Position numbers and translations under genes: made by a program
Shown: one piece after another, positions 1 through 43,600 of the stretch
How the letters are laid out: the number at the start of each line of letters is the position of its first letter
Position numbering within the stretch: the first letter of the stretch is position 1
Notes under the pieces: generated by a model
Told to the model about the DNA's origin: nothing
The model's database searches: none
The model's input: only the letters and a program-made list of their open reading frames with translations
Source of the DNA: Cyanophora paradoxa CCMP329
Lineage: Eukaryota > Plantae > Glaucophyta
Direction: 5' to 3'
NCBI GenBank assembly: GCA_004431415.1
Contig: QPMI01000195.1
Location: forward strand, 1 to 64,000
Length of the DNA stretch: 64,000 nt

Positions 1-3000
1 GGGGCGACGAGGGCGAGGCGGTCGCAGGCGGCCCAGCACATGACCGCCGAGAAGGTGTGCACCGGCTGCTCGGCCGCCCGGAACTCCCAGATACCTGCCC
101 GCCCCCCCGCCCCCCCGCCCGCCCCGGTCCCTCGTCGACGTCGTCCCGCGCTGGCGACACGGGCACCGATGTGGCCAGCGCCGGTGCGCACCGGCGTCCG
201 GCTGGTTGAAGCGGGCGGCGGCCTACAACAGCGGTCATAATAATCAGAGTTTAGCGGCACGTGCGAGACGGCGGGCGGGCCGGGCGTGGCGGGCGCGCGG
301 GCGTATTTCTTCTTAAAGACCGCCTAGGTTTTGGGCGGGGTCCGCGGAGGCGCGGGGGGCGGGCCTGCATTCCCAGCCGCTCGAGGGACTCAAAGAGGGC
401 GACGTCTCCCGGCCTGAGAGGGGGGGGGGGGGGGGAGCGCTCAGGAAGCAGGGGGTGCAGGAGGGGGTTTTAAGCCTTTAATTGGGGGGGGAAGGGGGGT
501 TGGGGGGGGGGGGGGGTGGGAGGAGGAGGGGAGCGCGCTTCGAGAGGCGGGCATCGAAGAACGCCTGGGTACACGCCAGCACCACCGCGCCATACACGTC
601 GTTCTGGACCTGAAGGGGGGGGGGGGGGGGGGGCCGACTCACATCGATCCTCTGTGGCTATCTAAAGCGAGGAGGCGGTGGGGTACATACGTACCTGGGT
701 GTAGGCCTCGTTGCCGATGCGAACGGGGCCCTGCCCACGGTACCCTGCGCGGGAACGTCCCCGAGAGCGGAGCGGGGTACGCAATTCGAGCCGCACCGAG
801 GAGGGAGGTGCAAATTTTCTCGTCGAGAGCCGAACCGGACTCGAGACCGAGCCCGTAGAGCGGCTGCAGGTACCCGTCCTCCGACGCTGCGCCGCGAGTT
901 CGGATTTCTACGTATACATTCTAAAGCGGTCCGCGACGGAATCGAACCCGCGACGAGGTTCGTGATGTAGCGGAGGTAGTATTCCATTGTCTTCGTGTCA
1001 CCCTGTACGGAGGGGGGTATGGGAGGTCGGGCTTGGGGCCGGTAGGGCTTCCGGGGCGGGGAGCGCACGAGGCGGGACAGGGCCGTAACGGTAAAGAACG
1101 AATCGCGGAGCCAGTTGAAGCGGTAGTCCCTGCCAGAGGATGAGGTACGGGGTACGCATTCAGGGGGTAGAGAACGAGTTTCGTGCGGGGTACAGGGCGA
1201 GGACGGACCAGGTGCGCCCCGCCAAATCGCCCGCCTCTGGGATGGAGGTCGTGTGCGCCGCTGCCGGTTGCAATCAGCTTTTTATCGAAGGTCACGGCTG
1301 CTCGTGCAGGGAACAGGGGTAAGCGGACCGACGACGGCGCCGGTCGACTCGTAGCAGCAGAGCTTCAGTGTGATCGCCGACCGGATCACCTGTGCGGGTA
1401 CCCCCCGGGTCGGAGGTCCAGGGGCGCAGCGAGTCGGGCGTTCGGAGATGATAAGAAGGGGTAAGGGGTGGGGAGAGGAAACGGGAGATGAGAAGAAGGG
1501 GTAAGGGGGGGGAAAGAGGGGGTACCGCGTCCTGCCACTCGAGGGGGATGGAGAGGAAACGGGAATACTGCGTTTGGGGGCCGGGTGCAGGTTGGGGGAA
1601 GGAAGCGCATGCGCAAACGGGGTCCGGCGCATGCTAAAGGCACCTGCTCGCGCCAGTAGAGGCTGGTCTCTTCCAGGAATTCGCGCCCTACCTCCCGCGG
1701 CGTCTTGCTCAGCGGCTGCCGCGGAATTCATGATCAGGAGGCAGAACGGGGGGGGGGGGGGGGGCAAGAGGGGAGGGGCGTACGCGCCTCGTCGGGACCG
1801 AGGACGAGCGTGGCGGGCTCGACGCAGAGGAAGGGTACCTCGTCCATCAGGAAGCGCGCCGCAACGCCCTGGGGGGAGGGGGAGAACGGGGGGGTGGGAA
1901 AAGGGGGGGAGGAAAGGAATTCCCCGGGTCGGCGAAGGGGGGGAGGGCCGGAGGAGGGAGGTCGGGGTACGGACCTCGAGGGTGGCGCGGAGGTTCTTGC
2001 TCGCGTCCGTGTGCATGAAGCGCACGTGGTTGCTCCCTCTGCGGGGGGTACACGGTCTGAGGCAGGGGAAGGGGAGGGGCGAGCGGGGTACGTTGCGCGC
2101 ACGAGACGCGGACGGGGGCCGTGGCGCCGTAATCAAAGGTCTGTGTGGGAGGGGGGAGGAGGGCGGGGGGCGCCCTCGTATGATCAGCAAGGATGAGACT
2201 GGTCGGGGGTACGCATTGCGGGCGCCACCAGGCTGCCGCAGGGGGCCAAGGGCGCGAGCGCACAGGCCGCAGGCGGACGACGATACGACACGGCTTGGAG
2301 GTCAGCGGCCGCAGGATGCGCACGAACTGAGGCCGGCCGGCCGTAAGAGGGGGGGAGGGGGGGGCGGGGAAAGAGGGGCTGGGCGGGAGTACAGGGCCAC
2401 CTGCTGGGACGGAACGTGCGCCATAGTGCGAAAATCGGGGAGCGAAGTCAAGGACTGGGGAAAAGGGGAGGGGGGGGAGGGTGGAAGGGAGGGAAGGGGG
2501 GGGGAAGGGGGGGGCGAGTTGATTAGAGTCACGGATGATCAAAAGTCAGGAGACGGGGCCGGCACCCTCGAGCTCAGCCCCGTGCGTGTCACGGAGGACA
2601 GTGCGAAGGATGGCCGTGTTGTGGACGTACCTGGGAAACAGGTAAGGGGGGGGATCGTGGACGCAGGGGTACCGCAGCGCGATTCGAATGCTCGACATAC
2701 CCCTGCTCGGTGGAGGCGAGGTCCTGGACGCAGACGTCGAAGAAGCCGGCGGCGGGGCCCGGGGCCGGCGGCGGGGGCGGCGAGGCGCGGGGCTCGGGTC
2801 GGGGCCGCTGGCCCTTCATCGGTTCGGATAGGCCGCCGTTGATGAGGCAGTTGAACACCGGGTCCCCTGCGCGTGTATGCGCGCCGGCGCGCGCCGCTCG
2901 AACGGCCGTTCACGCCGAGGCGCGCGCCGGGGCGCGCGCGTCGCAATCGCACCGTCGAAGGAGGGCAGGCACATCCAGACGTAGCGAGCGTGCCGGTCGA

Positions 3001-3390
3001 TGAGAGCTGCCACCTGGCAGTTACCTGCGCACGCACACGCGCGTCGGGCCGGCGCCGGGCCTAGGCCTAGAAAATCGAAGAGACAAGTTTTAAAGCACCG
3101 ATGACGAAGAGATCGAGGCTGTTCGTGATGACCACGTCGTGGGGAAAGCCGCCTTTCGTCGCGGCCTTCGAAGATGCTGCAGCAGCTGCAGCCTGGACGC
3201 GTACGCGCGCGCCGTCCGCCGTTAGTCTCGATCCATGCCCTATAGCTAGCTACAGGCCTTCATGTGGACATCAAAGCTTGAGCGTCCGCACCTGCATTGC
3301 GCTCCCGCGGCCGGGCACTGCGCTTGCAATTGCGGCAGCGGCTTCGCGATCGGCTGGCGGCTGGGCTGTAGCTATAGCTGGCGCGGACAT
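1..3390 (-). CDS. Glycoside hydrolase family 15 (bacterial-type trehalase/glucoamylase-like), multi-exon, 3' end runs off window start
   Basis: Spliced exons give GH15 hallmarks: LFVIGNCQVAALID..WMCLPSFDGDPVF (~3130-2840), VIRSAITLKLCCYESTGAVV, AAHTTSIPEAG..RTW|DYRFNWLRD (~1260-1100), GYRGQGPVRIGNEAYTQ|VQNDVYG (~750-590), GIWEFR..HTFSAVMCWAACDRLA (~93-1). The start ATG at 3390 is tentative. Confidence 0.85.
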
Positions 3391-3539
3391 CCTTGCTGCT
3401 CTAGATTCCTAGATCTTCGAATACTTCCGATCGCGCGAGCGACTTGTTCACGAGCTGCAGTGTGCCACGCGGACGGTGAGATCAATTGCAAGCTGCTGCT
3501 GCTGAAGTGCTGATCATGATCTGCGAATCTTGCGTGATC

Positions 3540-4920
3540 TATAGGCTATAGCTGCTGCTGTTCCGAGGTTGAATGATGCTTGATCGCGTTCTGAAAATTC
3601 TGAACGATGGATCCACAGGCTGGGGTACAAACACATGCATATGCACTGAGCTCAGCCGCGCCTCAGCGGCTAGCGCTGTTAAAACGTTGACGTTTGCGCA
3701 CTGCGCAATGCGTATGCGCAGCGGAGCCCAGCCGGTGCGCGTGCCGCAGCCGCGGACAGGCCGCGCGCGGCCGCGCGCGCGCGCACGTGCACATGTACAC
3801 ATCCGATGATCGCGATCGCATGCGCATGCGCACGCGCGCATCGACGGGGGGGCCGCCGCCGGCGCCGGCGGCCCGCGCGCACATCGGCGCTGCAGCCGCG
3901 TATACGTAAACGTATACGTAGGCGCCACTCCACTGGCCACTGGGCCAATGCTTGCAATTGTAGCTACGCGTACATAGACGGAGAAGTCCCGATCGCGAGC
4001 GAGCGCCGCCAGCTCCCGATCGCGAGTGACCTGCAGCTGCGAGCGCGCGCCGCCAGGGCGAGCTTAGGGGGGGGTACAACGGCGAATGACCAACCATGAC
4101 GCCCTCGGGGGCGGCCGCGCCGGCGTCGGACCGGTACCAGAGGACTACGTATATATACGCGGACCTGCGGGGGGTGGGGGGGGTGCACGTGGGGGGGGGG
4201 GGGGGGAAGGTTCAAAGAATTCGAAGAAGATAAAGGAGGAAGAGGCGGGTACGGGATGTTCGGGGGAGGTGGAGATCTAGATCTAGAGCAGGGCGAGCTG
4301 GACGGACGCCGCCACCGCCTGCGGGAGGGGCCCGGGGGTACGGAGATCACTCGCCCGCGAGGGGTACGGGAAGGCGGGCACTGAGACGGGTGCCTCGTGC
4401 GCGGACTCGTCGTCGTTCCGCCCCTGAGGATCGAATTTGTTAAAATTCGAAATGGGTTCGAATCCGGCCAGGAGCCGGGAGCGCGGCGCCGGCGCACCGC
4501 CTGGGATAGCTTGCCGCGGACGAACGCCAGCGCGGCCCTGCGGGCGGGGGGTACGCCTCGCGCCCTGGACGAGAGGCGGAGGCGGGGGTACGCGATTGCT
4601 CCGCACCGGTAGGCGGCGGTCGCGTCCCCCGCGCCGCAGCGGGCGGGGCCGCAGAGGACGGCGGCGGGGCGGGCGGGGGAAGAGAGGAGCCGCAGGGCGA
4701 GGCCCAGGGAGGGGGGGAGGAGCTGGTCCGCCTGCCCCACGTACACGTACGCCTCCGACTGCGCCGAAAATCTAAGAATAGAACGGAAAGACGGGGCCGG
4801 GGGAGGGGGGGTGGACGTGGAAAGGGGGGAGGGGAACTTCATGCGCACGGCCCTGAGGGAGTGGAGAAGGCCGATCGAGGAGGCGGGGGTCGGCGGGGGT
4901 CGGCGCCCCGCGGGCCGTTG
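3540..4920 (-). CDS. Possible multi-exon hypothetical protein
   Basis: Exon-like blocks with AG/GT(GC) borders and partly compatible phase (SEAYVYVGQADQLLPP.., AALAFVRGKLSQA, GRNDDESAHE, AVAA|SAYIYVVLWYRSD..M|VTRDRELAALARDRDF). No recognisable domain; start and stop unresolved. Confidence 0.3.
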
Positions 4921-31409: not shown

Positions 31410-33528
<2,119 letters not shown>

Positions 33529-33922: not shown

Positions 33923-36900
33923 TTACTGCCCGGCGCTGCCGAGGGCGGCGAGGACGGTGCCGACGAGGGCGACGGCGCCGGTGATGATGGCGCCCAGCGT
34001 CAGCTGCTGCTCGCGCTGCTTGCGCTCGCCCTCCGCCTTCTCCTCCGTGGCAGCCTTCGACTCGTCCGCCGCCTTTGCCGCGGCGGCCTCCGCGGGGCTC
34101 GGCGACGGCGGCCGCGGCGGGAGGACCGTCGAGGCGTCCGCGGACTTGTACGAGTCGAGCACCTGCATTCGAATTCGAATTCAAAATCTCAAAATTGTAA
34201 GGGAGGAATCGGGCGCGCCTTGTTCACGCTGAAGCTCGGGTCGACCACGACGGGCTTGCCCGTCTCCAGCGTCGGCGTCACGCCCGCAGCCTCGAGCTCC
34301 ACGGCCTGCGCTATTTTTAAAAGAGGGGAGATGCGTACGGGGGGTACGCGTGCGCACGTCGCGGACGGCGGGGTCGGACAGGACATTGCGGGCCGCGCCG
34401 CGGAAGTCGACGGCCTGGGCGCTCGCCTCGAGCTGCCGTACCCCTAAGAACAAGAAAAAAGAAAGAAAGGAAGAGAAGGGGGGTACGGCGCACTGCGTCG
34501 GTGGAGGGGAGGCGGCGGTACCCCGCGGGGGCGGTGGGGTCCGTCGACATGTCGCGGGCGGCGGAGAGCCACTGCGACTGCTCGTCGGTCCGCTTCGCGG
34601 CGAGGGCCCAGTCCGGCGTCGTCCTGCCGGCTTCCGATCAGTTTCGGGTGATCTTGTTGATGGCGCCGGCGGGATTCGAGCCGGCGCACTTGACGCGGTT
34701 CCACGAGTCCCACGCGGAGCGCTCAGACGCGCTCAGGATCCTGCACGGCGCGCGAATTAGGGGGTACTGCGAAAGAGGAGGAAGCGGGGTAGGGCGCGCA
34801 CGGCGGGGCGGGCAGCATGACGGCCGGGGCCGGCGGGGGCACGCCCGGGGGCAGCGGGTACGGCTGCCGGAGGCGTCCGCGTCACTTCTCATAAAGAGGG
34901 TACACGAAATGCGGAGGGGGAGCGGACCTTGGGGGCTTCGGCGGGGGGGCCGACGGCGGCGCGGGCGATCGCCCGCCACGCGTCCGTCTGGGGCGATGGG
35001 GAAAGTCACGGCCGGGAATGGAGGGAGGGGTACACGGGGTACGAGAATACGGGGCCACCTCGGGGGTCTTGCCCTTGGCGAGGGCGCCGGGGCGGCCGGC
35101 GGGGGCGATCGCACCGGGGCCGCCACCGTCGACCTCTGCGGCCGGCGGGCGTCAGCGTCAGCGCCCTTAGCGCCCAATCTAATCGTATCGTTCTTTCTTT
35201 CTCCTCTGCTCTAGATCATGAGAGGCTGATCTTAACCCAATCGAGCCCGTCCGATCCAATCGTCCTGTCTTCTATCGCCCTTCTCATCGATGCAAGGGGC
35301 GCACGGGATGCGACGTCCCGGGCGAAGGAGCGCCACATGTCCGCCCCGTCGCCCGAGGGGGAAGAGGAGGAGGAGGAGGCGGCGCCGCCCGAAGACGCCG
35401 CCGCCACCTCTGCCCCCCGGCATCGTGAGCGGGCCGAGGGAGCGAAGGGAGCGAAGGAAAGGGCCGCACGGTTGGAGACGTCCTTCGCGAATGAGCGCCA
35501 CATCGACGCGCCGTCGTCCGCGGGCGCGGAGGAGGCGGCGCCGGGGGCGGCGGCGGCGGCCTCGCGGGCGACCCCGCGCCACAGGTCCGTCCCGTCGCCC
35601 GCGCTCGGCGCGCTCGGCTGCGGGGCGCCGCCCTCAGATCGAAGGAAGGGCGGGGAGGAAGCAGAAAGAGGGAGCAGGAGGAGGACGAGAGGGACGAACC
35701 GCGGCGCTGGCGGCCTCCGAAGCCTCGCGCCAGCGGCCCCACGCGCTGCCGTCGTCCTCCGGCGCGGCGGACGGCTCGCCCGAGCCCGAGAGGCCCGTCG
35801 GGGCGGCGGCCTTGGGCGCCGGGGCGCCGGAGCCGGAGGCCTCCGAGGGGACGAAGCTGCGGGCAAAGTCGCGCCACTGGTCGACCTCGGCCTTGGGGTC
35901 GCGCTCCGCCTGCGCGGACTCCTTGAAGGCCTTGTCCGCCTCCTGCGCGGCGAAGCCGAGAGAAGCCAAGGGCGTGAGCGGTGGAGGAGGGGCGGGAGCG
36001 AGGGAGGGAGGGAGGGAGGGAGGGGAGGGCGCGCCTGCCAGCGGCCCCACGCGCTGTTGTCCAGCTCGGCGTCGTCGTCGTCGTCGTTGCCGGAAGAGGC
36101 GGCGGCCGCGGACGCGGCGGGCGCGGCCGGCTCGGAGGCCGCCGGGGCGGCGGGGGCGGCGCCCTCGGGGGTACGAAGCTGCGGGCGAGGTCGCGCCACT
36201 GGTCGACCTCGGCCTTCGGGTCGCGCTCCGCCACGGGCTGCGAACGAAGGCGGGGGAATCAGAGGCGGGGGGTACGCGAGACGAGGGGAAGGGCGGGCGG
36301 CTCGCCGTGTCCTTGGCCGCCTCGGCGGCCTCGCGCCAGCGACCCCAGGCGCTCCCCTCGTCCTCGTCTGCCGAGGCGGCGGGGCCTCCTGCGCCGGCGC
36401 CGGCGCGGCGGGCGCCGCGGCCGCCGGCGGCTGGGCCGGAGCGGCGGGGCCGCTCTGGGTCGCGGCCTGCTTGGCCTCCTGGCCGGGCCGGCGCCACATG
36501 TCGACCTCGGCCTGCGCGTCACGCTCCTCCAGCTCCTGCGGACGAAGGCGCCGGTGAGAAGAAAGGACAGTTTTCGGGACTGGATCAGAAGGGGGCACCA
36601 TCGACTCCCACGCCTCGTCGGCCTTGCGCCACGCGTCGAAGGCGCTGGCGGGGACCGAGGCTCCGTCCATCTCGTACCCCTCCGGGATGACCCACTTGGG
36701 CGGCTCGCGGGCCGGGCGCCCCGCCGGCGCGGCGGGGGCGTCGACGCCGGCGGCGCCGGCGGCCTCCCGGGCGACCGAGAGCCACGAGTCGACTGCGCGC
36801 GCGCGCGCGGCCCGTCAGGACAGTTGAGGGAAAAGAAAGGGAACCGCGCGGAATCGAACCCGAGGTGCGGTTCACGGTCGCGGCGTCGTCGACGATGATC

Positions 36901-39238
36901 GGGGCCGAGTACTCGGCCGGCGCGGCGGCCGCCGGCTGCTCCTCGGCTTCGGCCTTGAGCGCGGGGGCGGGCGCCTCGGCCTGGGGGGCCGGCGCCGCCT
37001 CCCCCGGCACCAGGTCGCGGGCCGCGCCCCGCCAGAAGTCGGTATCCTTCTTCGGGTCCCGGAACTAAGAGGAGAGACGGTCAAGAGAAGGAAAGGAGAG
37101 GAAAGGAAAGGGACGGGAAGGAAATGCACCTCCTGAGAGGAAGAGGAAGAAGCGGGCGAGTCGGGGGCGGACGAGACGACCTCGCGGGCGGCCCCGCGCC
37201 ACATGTCGACCTCCGCCTTCGGATCGCGAAAGGCGGCCTCCTCCTCGGGCTGAAAAGGGCGGGGCGGGGGGAACGAAGCAGGGGGATCAATTCCAGACGG
37301 AGGGCACGCCGCGCAGCGCCGGGGAGGGGGGGGGGGGGGGGGGGGTAGAGCGTACCTTAGCGTCCAGCGACTGCCGCCAGGAGTCCCAGGCGCCCTCGGG
37401 CACCGACGCCCCCTCGATCTCGTACCCCTCCGGGATCACCCACTGCGGGGGCGCCTCAGCGTGGGGCAGAAGCGAAGGGGAAGGGGGAAGGGGGGTACGG
37501 ACCTTGGGCGCCTCACGCTCGCCGGGGCCGCTCTGCTGGGCTGCGAGCACCTCGGGCGCCGGCTGCGAACGAACGAAGCTCGAAAGAATCCAAGGAGGAA
37601 GGGAGGGGTACGACAGACCGCCTCGTCGTCCTCGTCGTCGTCCTGGTAAGAGAAGGAGCCCTCGGCAGAGGCCTCCGGTGCGAGGTCGCGGGCCGTCTCG
37701 CGCCACATGTCCGCCTGCGTCTCCTGCGGGCGAGTGGAGCGAAGTGAGACGACGCAGCCGAGCGAGATTTGATCCGATCAAATCTCGGGCACCTCCTGCG
37801 GGGCGGCGGGGGCGTCGGGCACGAGGTCGCGGGCCGCGCCCTTCCAGAAGGCCGTCTCCTTCTTCGGGTCCCGATACTAAAAGGGAATAAACAGGGAACA
37901 AGGAAAGGAACAAGGAGAGTGGAGGGGGTACGGGAGCATACCTCGAAGGACGTGTTGCGGGGCTTGTACCAGGCCGCCTGGGTACACGGTTGGAAAGACG
38001 GCGCAGAGAAGCAAGGAAGGGGAGAGAGCGCACCCATGCCTCGCGCTGCTTGCGCTCCTCGTCGGTCTCGCCCTCGACGGGGGTACTGTACTTCAAGTAC
38101 TTCTCCTCGTTCGTCAGCGACGGCTCGGCCTTCGCAACGCGAGCGATCAAATTACGGGGGAGAGCTGCTTAAAATAGATCGGGCGGGGTACCGAGAAGAT
38201 GGCTTCCGCGTCGATGTCGACGGCGATTGTGCCGGCGCCTTCGGCCGCGTCGTCGGCCAGGTACATGTACTGCGGCGAAAGCGAAGATCAAATTCGAATT
38301 CGAAAATTCGAATTCGAACGTTCGAATCCGAGTGCGGGCGCACGTCCTCCTCGTCGTCGCCGACGACCGCCTCCTCCCCGGCCGCCTCCTCCTCGTCGGG
38401 GTACACGTTGTTGTCCTCATCGTCGAAACCCTCGGCCTTCGCGTAGTCCACGCCGGCCTCGGCGGCGTTGTACCCCGCGATCCCCTGCGATGGACGCGTC
38501 ACGCTAAGCCAGCCGCCGCCTCTAGAAACAGCGGAACAGAGCGCACGCGGGCGATGCGCTCGTAGCGCTCTGCCATGTCCATTTCCTGCCCCACCGCCTC
38601 GGGTCGCCACGTCTCCCGCGCCTCGCTCCACGACGCCTGCGCCCCCGAAAACATTCGATCCCGCGGGAAAATCGAGAGGAATCGGCTCCGATCGACGTAC
38701 CCAGGCGCTGGAGGGGTCCGCGGGGCCATCCTCGGTCTTGGGGAGGAAGCTCAGGTCAGGCTGCACCCACTGGGGCGCCGGACCTGCAAAGAACAAGAAG
38801 AGAGAACAGAGCTCAGCTCAGACGGCGGCTCAGATGTTCGGAAGGCCGGGCCGGGCCGGGCCGGATGGCGCACGGGAGGGCGGGGCGGCCGGCTTGGCGG
38901 GCGCCGCCGACTCCTCCGGCTTCCACTGCGACACGATGTCCTTCGCCACACCCTTGATCCAGTCGTCGTCCGCGTCCTGGGGAAAAGGGGGTACGCGCAT
39001 GAGGCCCCACCGAAATAATCACGGCGCTGTTGTGCAGCTGGGCTCCAACCACTCCCGCGGTTCGTATGGTTCTAACCGCGGGAGTGGACGCGGGCGGGGG
39101 CGGGAGTGGGAGAGAGGGGGGTACCGGGACCGGGGAGGCGGAGGTCTCCGGGGCGACGCTCTTGGCTGCGCCGCGCCAGAAGTCGACCTCCTTCTTCGCG
39201 TCCCGCGGCGTCGGCTTCTGCCCTTCGGCTTTAGCTTC

Positions 39239-39334
<96 letters not shown>

Positions 39335-40600
39335 TCGGGCGGCACCTGCTTGCTGTAGTTCTCCGCGGCGGCCTGCCACGCGCCCCACGCGGACCTCTCG
39401 TCCACGGCCGGGGTGGAGGAGGCTTCGTCGGCCTTGGCCTTGCCCTGGGCCTTTGGAGCGGGGGCGGGCGCCTCGGCCTTGGGGGCCGGCGCCGCCTCCT
39501 CGGGCACAAGGTCGCGGGCCGCGCCCCGCCAGAAGTCCGTCTCCTTCTTCGGGTCCCGGAACTAAGAGGAAATAAGAAAGGAAAAGGAAAAGGAAGGGAG
39601 GAGGGTACGCCGCACCTCGGGCTCCGGGGCCTTGGCCTTGGGGACCTTGGGGGGCTTGGGGGCCGCCGCCGGGGGAGCAGAAGACGCGGCCTCGGCCGGC
39701 TTGGGGGCGGCCTCGGGGGGTACCACGAAGTCCTTGGCGGCCTCACGCCAGAAGGCAACCTCCTTCTCCGGGTCCCGCGGCTCGAGCTCGGGCTGCGTGC
39801 GCGGCGCGCGTGAGCGGCGGCGCGCGGCGGCGGGCGGCGGGCGCCGGACCTCCGCCTGCATCGAGGAGCGCCAGGTGTCCCAGGCGCCCTCCGGCACGGT
39901 GGCCGCCTCGACCTCGTAGCCGTCGACGACCTTGAACTCGGGCGGCGGCCGCTCGATGTCCGGCGCGTCGCCGATGAGCTCCTTCATCGCGTCAGAGAGC
40001 TCCACCTCGACGATCTCCGGCTCGTAGCGCGACGTGTCCACGGGCAGCGGGAACGCGGCCTTCGCGCTCTCCAGGTCGACCTCCTCCGCCTCGTCCACCT
40101 CGGGCTTCGGGGTCGAAGACGCGTCGTTGGACTGCGAGCCCCCCTTCTTCTTCGCCCAGGAAGCCCATTTGTTCGATCCGCCGAAGCCGCCCTTCTTCCC
40201 CTTCTTCCCGCCGCCGTTTCCCGCCTGCAGCCGCCGCCCCGGTTGCAGAGTCAGCGCGGTCGTGCCGACAAGCGGTTTGAGCGCTGTCTAGACTCTAGTT
40301 GACGGCCGCGACTGCGCTTCACCGGCGCGAAATCGCCGGCGCCCGCCACGGCGCATATCCCGGGGGAGGCACCTTGCACGCGACGTCAAACTGCCGGGGC
40401 TCGGCGTGCTGCAGCAGAAAGGCGCTGTTGGTCTGCAGCCGTTCGCGACGGCCGAGCACCGAGCTGCCGGAGAAGCCCAGCCGCGACGGGTCGCGTGCGC
40501 TGTCGCTCGCCGCCGGCCGCTCTGCGACGGCGCGGGCCGGCACCGCCGGTTCAGCGCCGTATCGAGGGAGCAGCACAGTGCCACCCACGAAGGCGGCCAT
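33923..40600 (-). CDS. Large plastid-targeted, low-complexity protein with two families of Trp-centred repeats and a C-terminal transmembrane helix; function unknown
   Basis: Exon 1 (40600-40373) is a 76-aa MAAFVGG.. transit peptide. About 28 further exons encode ~18 copies of RDPKxEVDxW[RK]xxAR[DES] and ~11 of SAWxxW[RQ], separated by Ala/Pro/Glu spacers. It ends LTLGAIITGAVALVGTVLAALGSAGQ*. Two 1-nt slips in C runs (~36392, ~36168) must be corrected to keep frame. Confidence 0.82.
39240..39333. repeat. (CTCGGG)~15 hexamer repeat inside an intron of the Trp-repeat gene
   Basis: Read directly. The flanking exons (NYSKQ| and |KPTPRD) lie in different genomic frames and are joined by CAG|GT..CAG. 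Confidence 0.85.
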
Positions 40601-40692: not shown

Positions 40693-43600
40693 ATGGCGGG
40701 AAGGAGGCCTCGGCGCGCCCACGAGGATGCGTACGAGGAGGCTCCGCAGCCGCCGCAGCCGCCGATGATGGGCTTCTTGGCGCCAGCGCCCGCGGCGACG
40801 GAGCTGCCGCGCCGCCAGCCGCATGGCACGGAGGCGTCGCTCTCCTTCGGCCCGCGGCCGTCCTGGTCGTGCTCCCGGCCCGGCCTGCTTGCCGTGCACC
40901 GGCCGAACTGGAGCGCTGCCACCCCCGGGTGCTTCCCGAGTCGCTCTTTCGACGTGCGGTGGCCGTACGATGGCAGCAGCCGATCGGGCGGCGGCGGCGA
41001 TCTTTCCCGCGCGCTCGGCGTGGCGCGACTTGATTTCTTCGGGCGGCCCGTCGGCCGCACGCCCAGCGCCCTCGCGGAGGCGGCGTCCCGTGCCTTGCAT
41101 GACGACGCGGACGCCGAGCCCGTGCCGTGGGAGTCATGGGCGCCGCTCGCGCTCCCCGTCCTGCCCCTGCTCTTCCCGGACAAGGGCGGCCCCGCGCTTC
41201 GGGAGGTCCGCTGCTTCCTCCTCGACCTGCTGGGCGAGGAGCGCAAGGAGAAGTTCATGCGCTGGTGGGACAAGACGTACATCGAGATCCTCGAGTTCAT
41301 GGAAACGGTGCGCTTCGGAATGCCGGCCTCGAATGCGCGGGCGGGGGCGGGGGCGCGGCGCGGGTCCGAGGCGCGGCGGCCGGGCACAGATGTTCGGGCC
41401 CGAGGACCCGGAGAACGAGGACCGCGGGGCGATGTACCGAATCTGGCCGGGCCCCCGGGCCACGATCTTCGGCCGCTTCCTCGACTACAAGGCCGACTAC
41501 ATCAAGAAGCACGGGCGCCCGCGGCCCATCCGCCCCCCCGCGCGGCCCAAGCGGCGCGCCCCCTGGGAGAAGGTCGGTCCCCGCTCCTTTCCCGACGCGC
41601 CGGAGCGCGCGCGCCGCCCTCCGCTCACTCACGCGGGCCGCTCAGCCGCGGAACCCGCTGCCTATCCCGCTCCCGGACTGGCTTGTGGCCGAGCTCGAGC
41701 TCGACGACGGATCGTTCGACAACGGCATCTTCGCGGATCTCAAGAAGGAGATGGACGGGCCAGAGGTGCGCCGCGGCAGATTCGATCCGGCGCACGCGGA
41801 TCGAATCTCCGATCGGTCCAGGTCTGGGAGCACAGGAGCATGCCGAACCGCTTCCGCATCTTCTGCGTCATGATGATCACCTTCGTTGGCGCTGTCTTCG
41901 TCCTCATGCGCTGCGCCGCGCTCTGCATCTGGCAGAAGGAGTTCCTCTCCGTCCGTTCCCGTACCCCCCCCCCCCCCGACCCGCCTTTCGATCTCTCTGA
42001 CATGCCGTTCCCCGCACGGCGAGCAGGAGAAGGCGATTCTGCAGCAGACGACACTCGTCGACCGCTTCGAGCCCCGCCGCACCATCACCGACGCCGTCGG
42101 CCAGGCTCGCCTGTACCCCCCGAACTCTCCCCGCCGAGATCTGAGCCCGCCGCCCGCAGGTACTCGCGATGGACGAGCCGTGCTACGACGTGTACGCCCA
42201 CCCGAGGCGCGTACCCTTCCCCCGTCCTCCCCCTCCCCGGCCGCCCTTATCGCGCCTGTACCCCCCCCAGGTACTTCAAAAAGCCTGCTCGGGAGATCGC
42301 CGGAATGCTCGCGCCGATCGTCAAGCGCAAGTGCGCCGTACCCCCCTCGGCCCCGTCGCCTTCCGTCCGCCTGAAGACGCGGTAGCCCCCTGGAGCTGGA
42401 GATCGATCTCTGCCAGAGCCGCCAGTCGGGTATTCTGGTAGCCCGGAAGATCGACGAGCATCAGGTGAGCCGAGATGGGAGCGCACTCCGGGCCCTGCGG
42501 TCCTGCGCTGACGGGGGGTACAGGCCAGGGACATCGCCTTGCTGAGGCAGGAGGGTATCGACCTCTTCCAGCGGAACACGCGCGTGTACCCTCACGAGGA
42601 GATGGCCGCCGAGGCGAGCCCCGCGTACCCCCCACCCCCGCAACTCTTGTCTTGAGCGCTTACCGCAGGTGGTGGGGTACGTCAACAACGACCACAAGGG
42701 CCAGGCCGGCATCGAGATGTCGCAGTGCGTGCCCTACCCCCCCCCGTCTCCCCCCACGCAACCGAAGCGGTACCCCCCTCCAGGCAAGAAGTTCTCCTAC
42801 GGCGGCCCCGGTCGGACACGGGCGAGGTCTTCATACCCCCTCCCCCGAAGCCCAAGAAGGACGACGCGGATCGGTACCCCTCTCCCTTCTATCCTCCCCA
42901 CTGGGAGAGTCACGTACCCCCGCCAGATTCAAGGCGGTCAAGGCGGGTAGCGGCGCGCTGGCCCCCCAGACGCCCCTCACGGTCTTCGCCACGGACAAGT
43001 ACACGCTGCGGGTCCGTACTCCCTCCTGCATCGAACAGCGTACCCCTTCTCACAGCGGGAACGCCGTACCCCAGCTGCACATGGACCTGCGGCTCCAGCG
43101 GGCAGCCCGCAAGGCGCTCATCGAGTCCATGGAGAAGTACAGCGCGAAGGTTCGAATCCCGGCGGCTCAATTACGGCCTTGCTCTGAGCCGGCCGCCGTG
43201 TAGAGGGGTACCGTTGTCGTCATGGACTGCCACACGGGTGCGATCAAGGCCCTCGTCACTGTACCCTCCTACAACCCCCGCGAGTTCTTCAAGGTCACTA
43301 TCCCCTTCCCTTCCCGCTGGTCCGGTTCCTCACTGTACCCCCTCCCTGGGCAGGCCCCCCTGGAGCTCTTCAAGAACTGGGCCGTCGCGGACCTCTTCGA
43401 GCCCGTGCGGGGCCCTTTCCTTCTCCCGCTATCCCTCTACCCCCCCCCCGACCTCTTCCCCCCCCCCCTACCCCAGGGCTCGACCTTCAAGCCGATCAAC
43501 GTGGCGATCGCCCTCGAAACGGGGGCCATCAAGGTGCGGGGGGGTACTGCGCCCCGTCCTGCCGCCCCCCCCACCCAACTCTTGCTTCCCGCCTACTAGT

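What the first reader, a model, noticed from the sequence alone, without database searches (positions are those of the whole stretch)
33923..40600. Candidate multivalent 'sticker-and-spacer' plastid scaffold: ~29 Trp motifs, transit peptide and C-terminal membrane anchor
Seen: after a MAAFV transit peptide, the roughly 1,300-aa acidic Ala/Pro/Glu-rich protein alternates two short amphipathic motifs. Type A is [SG]AWxxW[RQ] (~11 copies, e.g. GAWDTWRSSM, GAWDSWRQSLD, SAWGRWREAA; three are preceded by GYE[VIM][ED]xA[ST]VP). Type B is RDPKxE[VT]DxW[RK]xxA[RK][DES] plus a hydrophobic residue (~18 copies, e.g. RDPKKETDFWRGAARDLV, RDPKAEVDQWRDFARSFV, GADMWRSFARDVA). The motifs are joined by variable low-complexity spacers, often one motif per exon, and the protein ends in one hydrophobic helix. 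Known: Rubisco condensates are built by disordered repeat linkers (EPYC1, CsoS2, PYCO1), and the Chlamydomonas Rubisco-binding motif is W[+]xx(hydrophobic)[-], which WRQSLD fits. Glaucophyte plastids have a Rubisco-rich central body whose organiser is, to my knowledge, unidentified. Inference: a membrane-tethered linker for the central body. Alternatives are a phycobilisome/thylakoid spacer or a division scaffold, given its position beside ftsI.
Basis: partly seen in the sequence, partly recalled or inferred. Interest (0 to 1): 0.85.

Follow-up and report, generated by a model that had tools for sequence, protein, structure and literature searches.

The report
Conserved Trp-helix plastid scaffold protein
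This is a real, expressed Cyanophora gene for a long, acidic, mostly disordered plastid protein carrying about 27 tryptophan helices and a membrane anchor; it belongs to an unstudied family shared with red algae, and that distribution argues against a role limited to the Rubisco body.

Summary
The gene lies on the minus strand (ATG 40600, stop 33925-33923) and has 32 exons. RNA-like contigs from three studies show it spliced.

My read-constrained model gives 1,427 aa. It matches the public Cyanophora paradoxa model tig00000836_g4694.t1 except in one zone, where the window lacks two G bases.

The protein has:
- an F-type transit-peptide start;
- pI 4.4 and a net charge of about -104;
- 45 Trp;
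- 17 B motifs and about 10 A motifs;
- a C-terminal tail anchor.

A and B are not independent. They form a two-helix unit with fixed spacing.

The new result is that this is not an orphan. A profile of the B motif found 44 proteins among 1.84 billion. Every named one is a red alga, and all are annotated as hypothetical. They include Florideophyceae and Cyanidiophyceae, which by textbook knowledge lack pyrenoids. I found no Pfam family, solved structure, fold match, bacterial relative or paper.

The multivalent-scaffold architecture is supported. The Rubisco central-body linker idea is untested and is weakened by three points: the acidic charge, the family's distribution, and a motif kept identical across Form IB and Form ID Rubisco lineages. 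The binding partner is unknown.

The parts
33923..40600 (-). Whole coding region with stop codon: 32 exons, CDS 4,281 nt, 1,427 aa
   Evidence: a 4,390-nt contig in runs X1 and X4, plus shorter contigs in X8, lies on the locus. 14 GT/GC..AG introns were identified from it: 12 of the listed joints plus 2 deduced from the contig pieces. None appears in the DNA-like run X12; the other 16 introns inside the laid stretch were inferred so that their lengths sum exactly to the contig arithmetic; identical to public model P0001 outside 36.2-36.4 kb. Exon list is in notebook entry 2.
40373..40600 (-). Exon 1: 76 aa, transit-peptide-like, Phe at position 4
   Evidence: The junction to exon 2 (intron 40225-40372) was not covered by the laid reads. 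It is the best splice-score solution, fits the 520-538 nt of contig left upstream, and agrees with P0001. PMC2222254: cyanelle import needs an N-terminal Phe.
39850..40224 (-). Exon 2: conserved N-terminal module and first A helix
   Evidence: hhalign of P0001:77-620 against the red-algal alignment A2 gives 99.1% probability over this module and the B motif of exon 3.
34521..39789 (-). Repeat region with 17 B-motif copies (RDPKxExDxWRxxARxL type and shorter forms)
   Evidence: Copies at 39700-39789, 39481-39561, 39128-39217, 38911-38976, 37796-37876, 37655-37723, 37151-37240, 36984-37064, 36734-36790, 36446-36535, 36169-36237, 35826-35915, 35531-35617, 35471-35539, 35306-35374, 34928-34987, 34521-34610. 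A degenerate 18th copy without Trp lies in exon 30 (34358-34432).
37151..37442 (-). Best-modelled composite A-B unit (exons 16 and 17, across intron 37250-37355)
   Evidence: AlphaFold2 of P0001:652-714 with 117 aligned units gives mean pLDDT 82.7 and helices at 22-32 (A) and 43-59 (B). The first Trp codons of the eight clear A-B units start at 39882, 39387, 38036, 37388, 36347, 36049, 35741 and 34712.
38034..38636 (-). Central non-repeat modules (exons 8-11)
   Evidence: 53% identity over 53 aa to P0008, the other long tail-anchored form. By eye, exon 8 resembles the red-algal W..AR.VTGEM helix of consensus A2; this was not tested formally.
33941..34003 (-). C-terminal transmembrane helix (residues 1402-1422), five residues before the stop
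   Evidence: A run of charged residues (mixed Lys/Arg and Glu) precedes the helix, giving a tail-anchor layout.
36166..36167 (.). Probable one-base assembly deletion (extra G in reads)
   Evidence: table 4: seen in RNA-like contigs X1 and X4 and in one DNA-like X12 contig.
36380..36381 (.). Probable second one-base assembly deletion
   Evidence: table 4: seen in X1 and X4. Together the two shifts make the public model lose 33 aa, including one A-B unit.
39227..39345 (.). Hexanucleotide microsatellite inside intron 4
   Evidence: family D2. It is intronic in the model (intron 39218-39345).
36941..37102 (-). Exon-plus-intron-end duplicate of 39438-39599 (83% identity)
   Evidence: families D4 and D5. 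The repeats extend into the 3' ends of the preceding introns, so units multiplied by genomic duplication.

Best explanation
Shown: this is an expressed, 32-exon nuclear gene of Cyanophora paradoxa. It encodes a 1,427-aa protein that is strongly acidic and mostly disordered. The protein has a Phe-type plastid transit-peptide start, at least eight two-helix Trp units (A helix, about ten-residue loop, B helix), about nine further lone B helices, and a C-terminal tail anchor. It is the enlarged, membrane-anchored glaucophyte member of an uncharacterised family found throughout red algae; those members are shorter (about 570-870 aa) and have no membrane helix. Inferred: after import, the tail anchor holds the protein on a plastid membrane with its bulk in the stroma. 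The many Trp helices then act as repeated docking sites that bind several copies of one folded, oligomeric partner, while the acidic spacers keep the chain extended. Because the motif is almost identical in glaucophytes and red algae and absent elsewhere, the partner should be something highly conserved and particular to these plastids. A component of the thylakoid stromal surface or the phycobilisome fits that pattern better than the Rubisco body. The partner itself is not identified.
For: Expression and structure. Family: one search gave 44 hits, and every named one is a red alga. Collinear N-terminal module at 99.1% probability. Plastid targeting: nearly all full-length members start with a Phe-containing M..LLF.P or MAF-type N-terminus, with no signal-peptide-like hydrophobic start; PMC2222254. 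Disorder with local helices: AlphaFold2 of the Chondrus member gave pTM 0.23, with helices of pLDDT 70-90 exactly at A and B and spacers below 50; the Atlas model has pLDDT 0.42; the unit model has pLDDT 82.7. The nearly invariant columns are mainly Trp, Arg, Asp and Ala. A-B spacing is fixed. Tail anchor only in P0001 and P0008. Expansion by exon-plus-intron duplication.
Against: There is no localisation, interaction or phenotype data for any family member. The phyletic argument for a thylakoid or phycobilisome partner is circumstantial: cyanobacteria have phycobilisomes yet no relative was detected, phycobiliproteins are themselves acidic, and the red-algal members lack the anchor. The A-B unit could be a small self-folding domain rather than a docking site; pTM 0.40 does not decide this.
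Confidence: 0.45

Rival explanations
1. Rubisco central-body linker or peripheral tether: the Trp helices bind Rubisco and hold the condensate to a membrane, as RBMP1/2 do in Chlamydomonas.
For: The protein is multivalent and disordered, with short helices. There are 16 matches to the relaxed W[RK]xx[LIVA] pattern. No linker is known for glaucophyte or red-algal pyrenoids.
Against: pI 4.4 and net charge about -104, whereas characterised linkers are basic (my own knowledge). No strict Rubisco-binding-motif match. Orthologues occur in red algae that lack pyrenoids by textbook knowledge. The motif is nearly identical in lineages with Form IB (Cyanophora) and Form ID (red algae) Rubisco (own knowledge for the forms). 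The central body has no internal membranes (PMC6704402), so a tail-anchored protein could act only at its edge.
Confidence: 0.12
2. Specific version of the best explanation: an organiser of phycobilisomes or of the spacing of unstacked thylakoids, with the Trp helices docking on phycobiliprotein or photosystem stromal surfaces.
For: The family is restricted to the two eukaryotic lineages that carry phycobilisomes on unstacked thylakoids. There are no named hits from green, diatom, haptophyte or cryptophyte entries, although red-algal hits came from the EukProt and MMETSP collections, which by my own knowledge also cover those groups.
Against: No cyanobacterial relative. The Porphyridium member matches no chain in the PDB, so it is absent from any Porphyridium phycobilisome or photosystem structures deposited there. 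The red-algal forms are soluble.
Confidence: 0.2
3. Not a partner-binding scaffold: A-B hairpins are self-folding or self-associating beads, and the protein acts as an acidic polymer brush, a cation buffer or a self-condensing matrix.
For: Fixed A-B spacing and confident two-helix units. The charge is extreme.
Against: The precise Arg, Asp, Pro, Lys and Glu positions are deeply conserved, which suggests specific recognition rather than bulk properties. No known fold matched.
Confidence: 0.13
4. Plastid-division or peptidoglycan-wall scaffold functionally linked to the neighbouring PBP/ftsI-like gene.
For: A PBP transpeptidase fragment lies at 43222-43599 on the + strand.
Against: Gene neighbourhood is weak evidence in a eukaryotic nucleus. 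From my own knowledge, red algae have no plastid peptidoglycan, yet they keep the family.
Confidence: 0.03

Closest known systems
Uncharacterised red-algal proteins, e.g. Chondrus crispus XP_005711249.1, Porphyridium purpureum KAA8499547.1, Porphyra umbilicalis OSX72343.1, Gracilaria domingensis FGB62_31g14
   Same: Same A and B motifs, the same N-terminal module in the same order, a Phe-type N-terminus, acidic and Trp-rich.
   Different: They are 570-870 aa with a fixed set of about 4 A and 6 B motifs and no membrane helix. Cyanophora has 17-18 B motifs, Ala/Pro/Glu spacers and a tail anchor.
P0008 (JGI 3300017104, Ga0186639_100553; organism not identified)
   Same: Long form (1,248 aa) with many A-B units, the same central module (53% identity over 53 aa) and a C-terminal membrane helix.
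   Different: Ser/Thr/Pro-rich spacers, and no clear Phe at the start of the called ORF.
Rubisco linkers EPYC1, CsLinker, PYCO1, CsoS2
   Same: Short repeated helices or peptides on disordered spacers; multivalent.
   Different: No sequence relationship. Those are basic and lineage-specific (own knowledge); this protein is strongly acidic and conserved across two phyla. Rubisco binding is untested.
Chlamydomonas RBMP1/RBMP2 (membrane proteins carrying Rubisco-binding motifs)
   Same: A membrane anchor plus several copies of a short docking motif.
   Different: The strict motif is absent here. Topology and partner are unknown.
GW182-type Trp 'hooks' and Tic62/TROL FNR-binding repeats
   Same: These work alike in principle: repeated short motifs in a disordered chain, with aromatic residues as the conserved anchors, recruiting many copies of a folded partner (own knowledge).
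   Different: No homology; the comparison is by analogy only.

Membership tests
Unnamed rhodophyte-glaucophyte Trp-helix family | Composite A-B unit (AWxxW, about 20-residue gap, RDPKxExDxWRxxARxL) in several copies | tested here: met
Unnamed rhodophyte-glaucophyte Trp-helix family | Collinear N-terminal module before the first unit | tested here: met
   hhalign probability 99.1%.
Unnamed rhodophyte-glaucophyte Trp-helix family | Phe-type plastid transit N-terminus; acidic; Trp 3-5% | tested here: met
   PMC2222254.
Rubisco linker proteins (EPYC1 / CsLinker / PYCO1 / CsoS2 kind) | Disordered chain with repeated sticker motifs | tested here: met
Rubisco linker proteins (EPYC1 / CsLinker / PYCO1 / CsoS2 kind) | Net positive charge and high pI | tested here: not met
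   pI 4.4, charge about -104. The expectation itself comes from my own knowledge of these proteins.
Rubisco linker proteins (EPYC1 / CsLinker / PYCO1 / CsoS2 kind) | Binds Rubisco and demixes with it; located in the Rubisco body | not testable with these tools
   Needs biochemistry, imaging or complex prediction.
Rubisco linker proteins (EPYC1 / CsLinker / PYCO1 / CsoS2 kind) | Occurrence tracks pyrenoid-bearing organisms | tested here: not met
   Searches list Florideophyceae and a cyanidiophyte. Their lack of pyrenoids is textbook knowledge, not tested here.
Chlamydomonas Rubisco-binding-motif proteins | [D/N]W[R/K]xx[L/I/V/A] | tested here: not met
   0 strict matches; 16 matches to the relaxed form lacking the first position.
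CP12 | Pfam CP12 domain (AWD_VEEL core with Cys pairs) | tested here: not met
   no Pfam hit. The protein has 0.1% Cys.
Tail-anchored membrane proteins | Single hydrophobic helix within about 30 residues of the C-terminus and none elsewhere | tested here: met
   Actual insertion was not tested.

The most novel reading that the evidence does not exclude
The Trp-helix family is an ancient scaffold that predates the red-glaucophyte split and organises a major photosynthetic assembly. In Cyanophora its enlarged, membrane-anchored form would tether the Rubisco central body, or phycobilisome rows, to the innermost thylakoids. That would make it the first organiser identified for a glaucophyte or red-algal plastid sub-compartment.
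Probability: 0.15. Interest if true: 0.85.

Novelty: new variant of a known kind. Interest (0 to 1): 0.6.

Why it matters
No organiser of the glaucophyte central body or of red-algal pyrenoids is known, and reviews from 2026 call the molecular details sparse. This locus shows that a deeply conserved, multivalent Trp-motif protein exists in exactly these two lineages and has never been studied. Whatever its partner, it gives a concrete candidate that can be tested by peptides. It has orthologues in Porphyridium and in cyanidiophytes, groups that by my own knowledge include transformable species. It also shows a family growing by exon duplication and gaining a membrane anchor. Finally, the work corrects the public gene model, which loses one repeat unit to two single-base assembly errors.

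Tried and rejected
- **Pfam on ten exons and ten family members:** nothing except a sub-threshold or borderline DUF1353 match on the PxWVIPEGYExDGASVP stretch. Red-algal members lack that stretch, so I treat it as chance.
- **PDB sequence search** with the Porphyridium member and with the B profile: no match.
- **Fold searches:** Foldseek on the full model and VIA-align on the unit model found nothing above Z 3.1. The ESM Atlas gave no usable look-alike.
- **Bacterial and archaeal genomes** scanned with the motif: 67 pattern matches, none confirmed. An earlier try with A3 had no stretch conserved enough to search with.
- **Profile search with 43 family members:** no new lineages.
- **Paper searches** by accession, locus tag and topic: nothing on this family.
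- **Earlier findings of this scan:** none.
- **Gene modelling:** a GT-only intron enumeration had no solution, because three of the 31 introns use GC donors. One enumeration timed out. An unconstrained Viterbi run over-spliced. One search was an empty script.
- **Long joints in the RNA contigs** (1,150-1,200 nt, non-canonical ends, 21-22 nt sides): I read these as assembly collapses between repeat exons, not as splicing.
Full report
**Gene and expression**

The region is very GC-rich (63-81%) and all the motifs read on the minus strand. I laid contigs of three RNA-like runs from different studies and one DNA-like run on window 33950-39949. A 4,390-nt contig appeared in two runs and shorter ones in a third. 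They carried many joints with CT..AC ends on the plus strand, which are GT..AG introns on the minus strand. None of these joints was in the DNA-like run.

Fourteen introns were identified from the laid contigs: twelve of the listed joints plus two deduced from the contig pieces. I inferred the other sixteen inside the laid stretch with a dynamic programme. It forced the intron lengths between contig anchors to sum exactly to the contig arithmetic, kept the frame open and scored the splice sites. Three of the gene's 31 introns use GC donors.

The 5' junction (intron 40225-40372) lay outside the 6,000 letters allowed. It is the top-scoring solution and leaves 16-34 nt of 5' UTR within the contig length.

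The model has 32 exons and 1,427 aa. The joined model was kept only in scratch files and was never sent to a search tool. Searches used single exons by reference, or proteins that the tools returned.

**Check against the public model**

The motif search returned P0001, the EukProt entry Cyanophora paradoxa tig00000836_g4694.t1 (1,394 aa). It matches my model at 910 of 918 and 471 of 476 aligned positions. The only real difference lies at 36.2-36.4 kb.

There the RNA contigs carry an extra G after 36166 and after 36380; a DNA contig also carries the first one. The window therefore probably has two single-base deletions, and the public model loses 33 aa, including one full A-B unit.

**The protein**

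- Composition is Ala 21%, Pro 10.7%, Glu 9.9%, Ser 8.3%, Asp 7.8% and Trp 3.2%, which is 45 residues.
- The mature part has pI 4.4, a net charge of about -104 and a mass of 142 kDa.
- Seventeen B copies align with an invariant Trp, and an eighteenth has lost the Trp.
- About ten A copies are present, three of them with the GYE...VP prefix.
- Shuffling shows the counts are far above chance.
- The last exon ends in a 21-residue hydrophobic helix, followed by five residues and preceded by a run of charged residues. This is a tail-anchor layout.
- The N-terminus has Phe at position 4. Cyanelle import requires such a Phe (PMC2222254).
- Most introns are phase 0, and B motifs often start an exon.
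- DNA repeats extend into the preceding intron ends, so the units multiplied by genomic duplication.

**A and B form one unit**

Across the family, A is followed by B at a fixed distance. The mode is 25 residues between the second A Trp and the B Trp, in 81 of 159 units. In 117 aligned units the three Trp and one Ala are invariant, and Arg, Asp, Glu and Arg positions are about 90% conserved.

AlphaFold2 models the Cyanophora unit as two helices joined by a loop, with mean pLDDT 82.7. It models the whole Chondrus protein as such helices separated by low-confidence spacers, with pTM 0.23. No known fold matches.

**The family**

A profile of the 17 B copies, searched against 1.84 billion representative proteins, gave 44 hits. 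Apart from Cyanophora itself, all named hits are red algae:
- Bangiopsis, Timspurckia and two Porphyridium species;
- Porphyra and Pyropia;
- Chondrus, Eucheuma, Gracilaria and Agarophyton;
- Cyanidiococcus.

All are annotated as hypothetical.

Nearly all full-length members begin with a Phe-containing transit-like N-terminus. None has a signal-peptide-like start. All are acidic (pI 4.3-4.5) and Trp-rich. Only Cyanophora and one unidentified transcript, P0008, have a C-terminal membrane helix. The N-terminal module aligns to the red-algal profile with 99.1% probability, so these are orthologues and not just carriers of a shared motif.

I found no Pfam family, solved structure, bacterial relative or publication.

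**Function**

Nothing here tests binding. The architecture fits a multivalent adaptor, and in Cyanophora it looks membrane-tethered.

The Rubisco-linker idea meets one criterion, repeated stickers on disordered spacers, and fails three:
- **Charge:** the protein is strongly acidic.
- **Distribution:** the family occurs in red algae that lack pyrenoids.
- **Motif:** the strict Chlamydomonas Rubisco-binding motif is absent.

In addition, the motif is almost identical in lineages that use different Rubisco forms. The central body also has no internal membranes, so a tail-anchored protein could act only at its edge.

The phyletic pattern points instead to a partner shared by red-algal and glaucophyte plastids. 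The phycobilisome or the unstacked thylakoid surface is the obvious candidate. This is circumstantial, and it is weakened by the lack of any cyanobacterial relative. I therefore commit to a membrane-anchored multivalent adaptor for a conserved stromal-face partner at 0.45. Within or beside that, I put the phycobilisome/thylakoid reading at about 0.2 and the Rubisco reading at about 0.12.

**Verdict**

The feature is a real member of a conserved but unstudied family. It is a new variant of the multivalent-scaffold kind, with interest 0.6.

Noticed in passing
window 36166 and 36380 (also 36251 and 36266 in one DNA contig): Reads carry an extra G at these places. These are probably single-base deletions in the assembly within an approximately 80% GC stretch, and they shift the frame of exons 20-21 in the public gene model.
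   Followed up: partly
window 32613-33510, + strand: Exons of a SecY/Sec61-alpha gene (Pfam SecY, E 1e-15 and 4e-17) lie just downstream of the gene's 3' end.
   Followed up: partly
window 43222-43599, + strand: An ORF piece matches the penicillin-binding-protein transpeptidase domain (E 9.5e-6).
   Followed up: partly
window 39227-39345: A perfect hexanucleotide (GCTCGG) microsatellite fills most of intron 4. It reads as open frames on both strands, which could mislead ORF-based reading.
   Followed up: yes
window 36599-36704, 37356-37452, 39869-39946: The three PxWVIPEGYE..GASVP stretches give a weak Pfam DUF1353 match (25.5 bits summed on P0001). Red-algal members lack this part, so it is probably chance.
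   Followed up: partly
window 35547-36732, 35560-36711, 36420-37621: RNA-like contigs show joints of 1,150-1,200 nt with non-canonical ends and only 21-22 nt on one side. These look like assembler collapses between near-identical repeat exons, not splicing.
   Followed up: no
introns 34163-34218, 35943-36034, 36238-36305: Three of the 31 introns use GC-AG rather than GT-AG boundaries.
   Followed up: yes
L001 (JGI 3300017104, Ga0186639_100553), 208-3954: A 1,248-aa tail-anchored long form of the family with Ser/Thr/Pro-rich spacers, from an unidentified sample. It may be another glaucophyte.
   Followed up: partly
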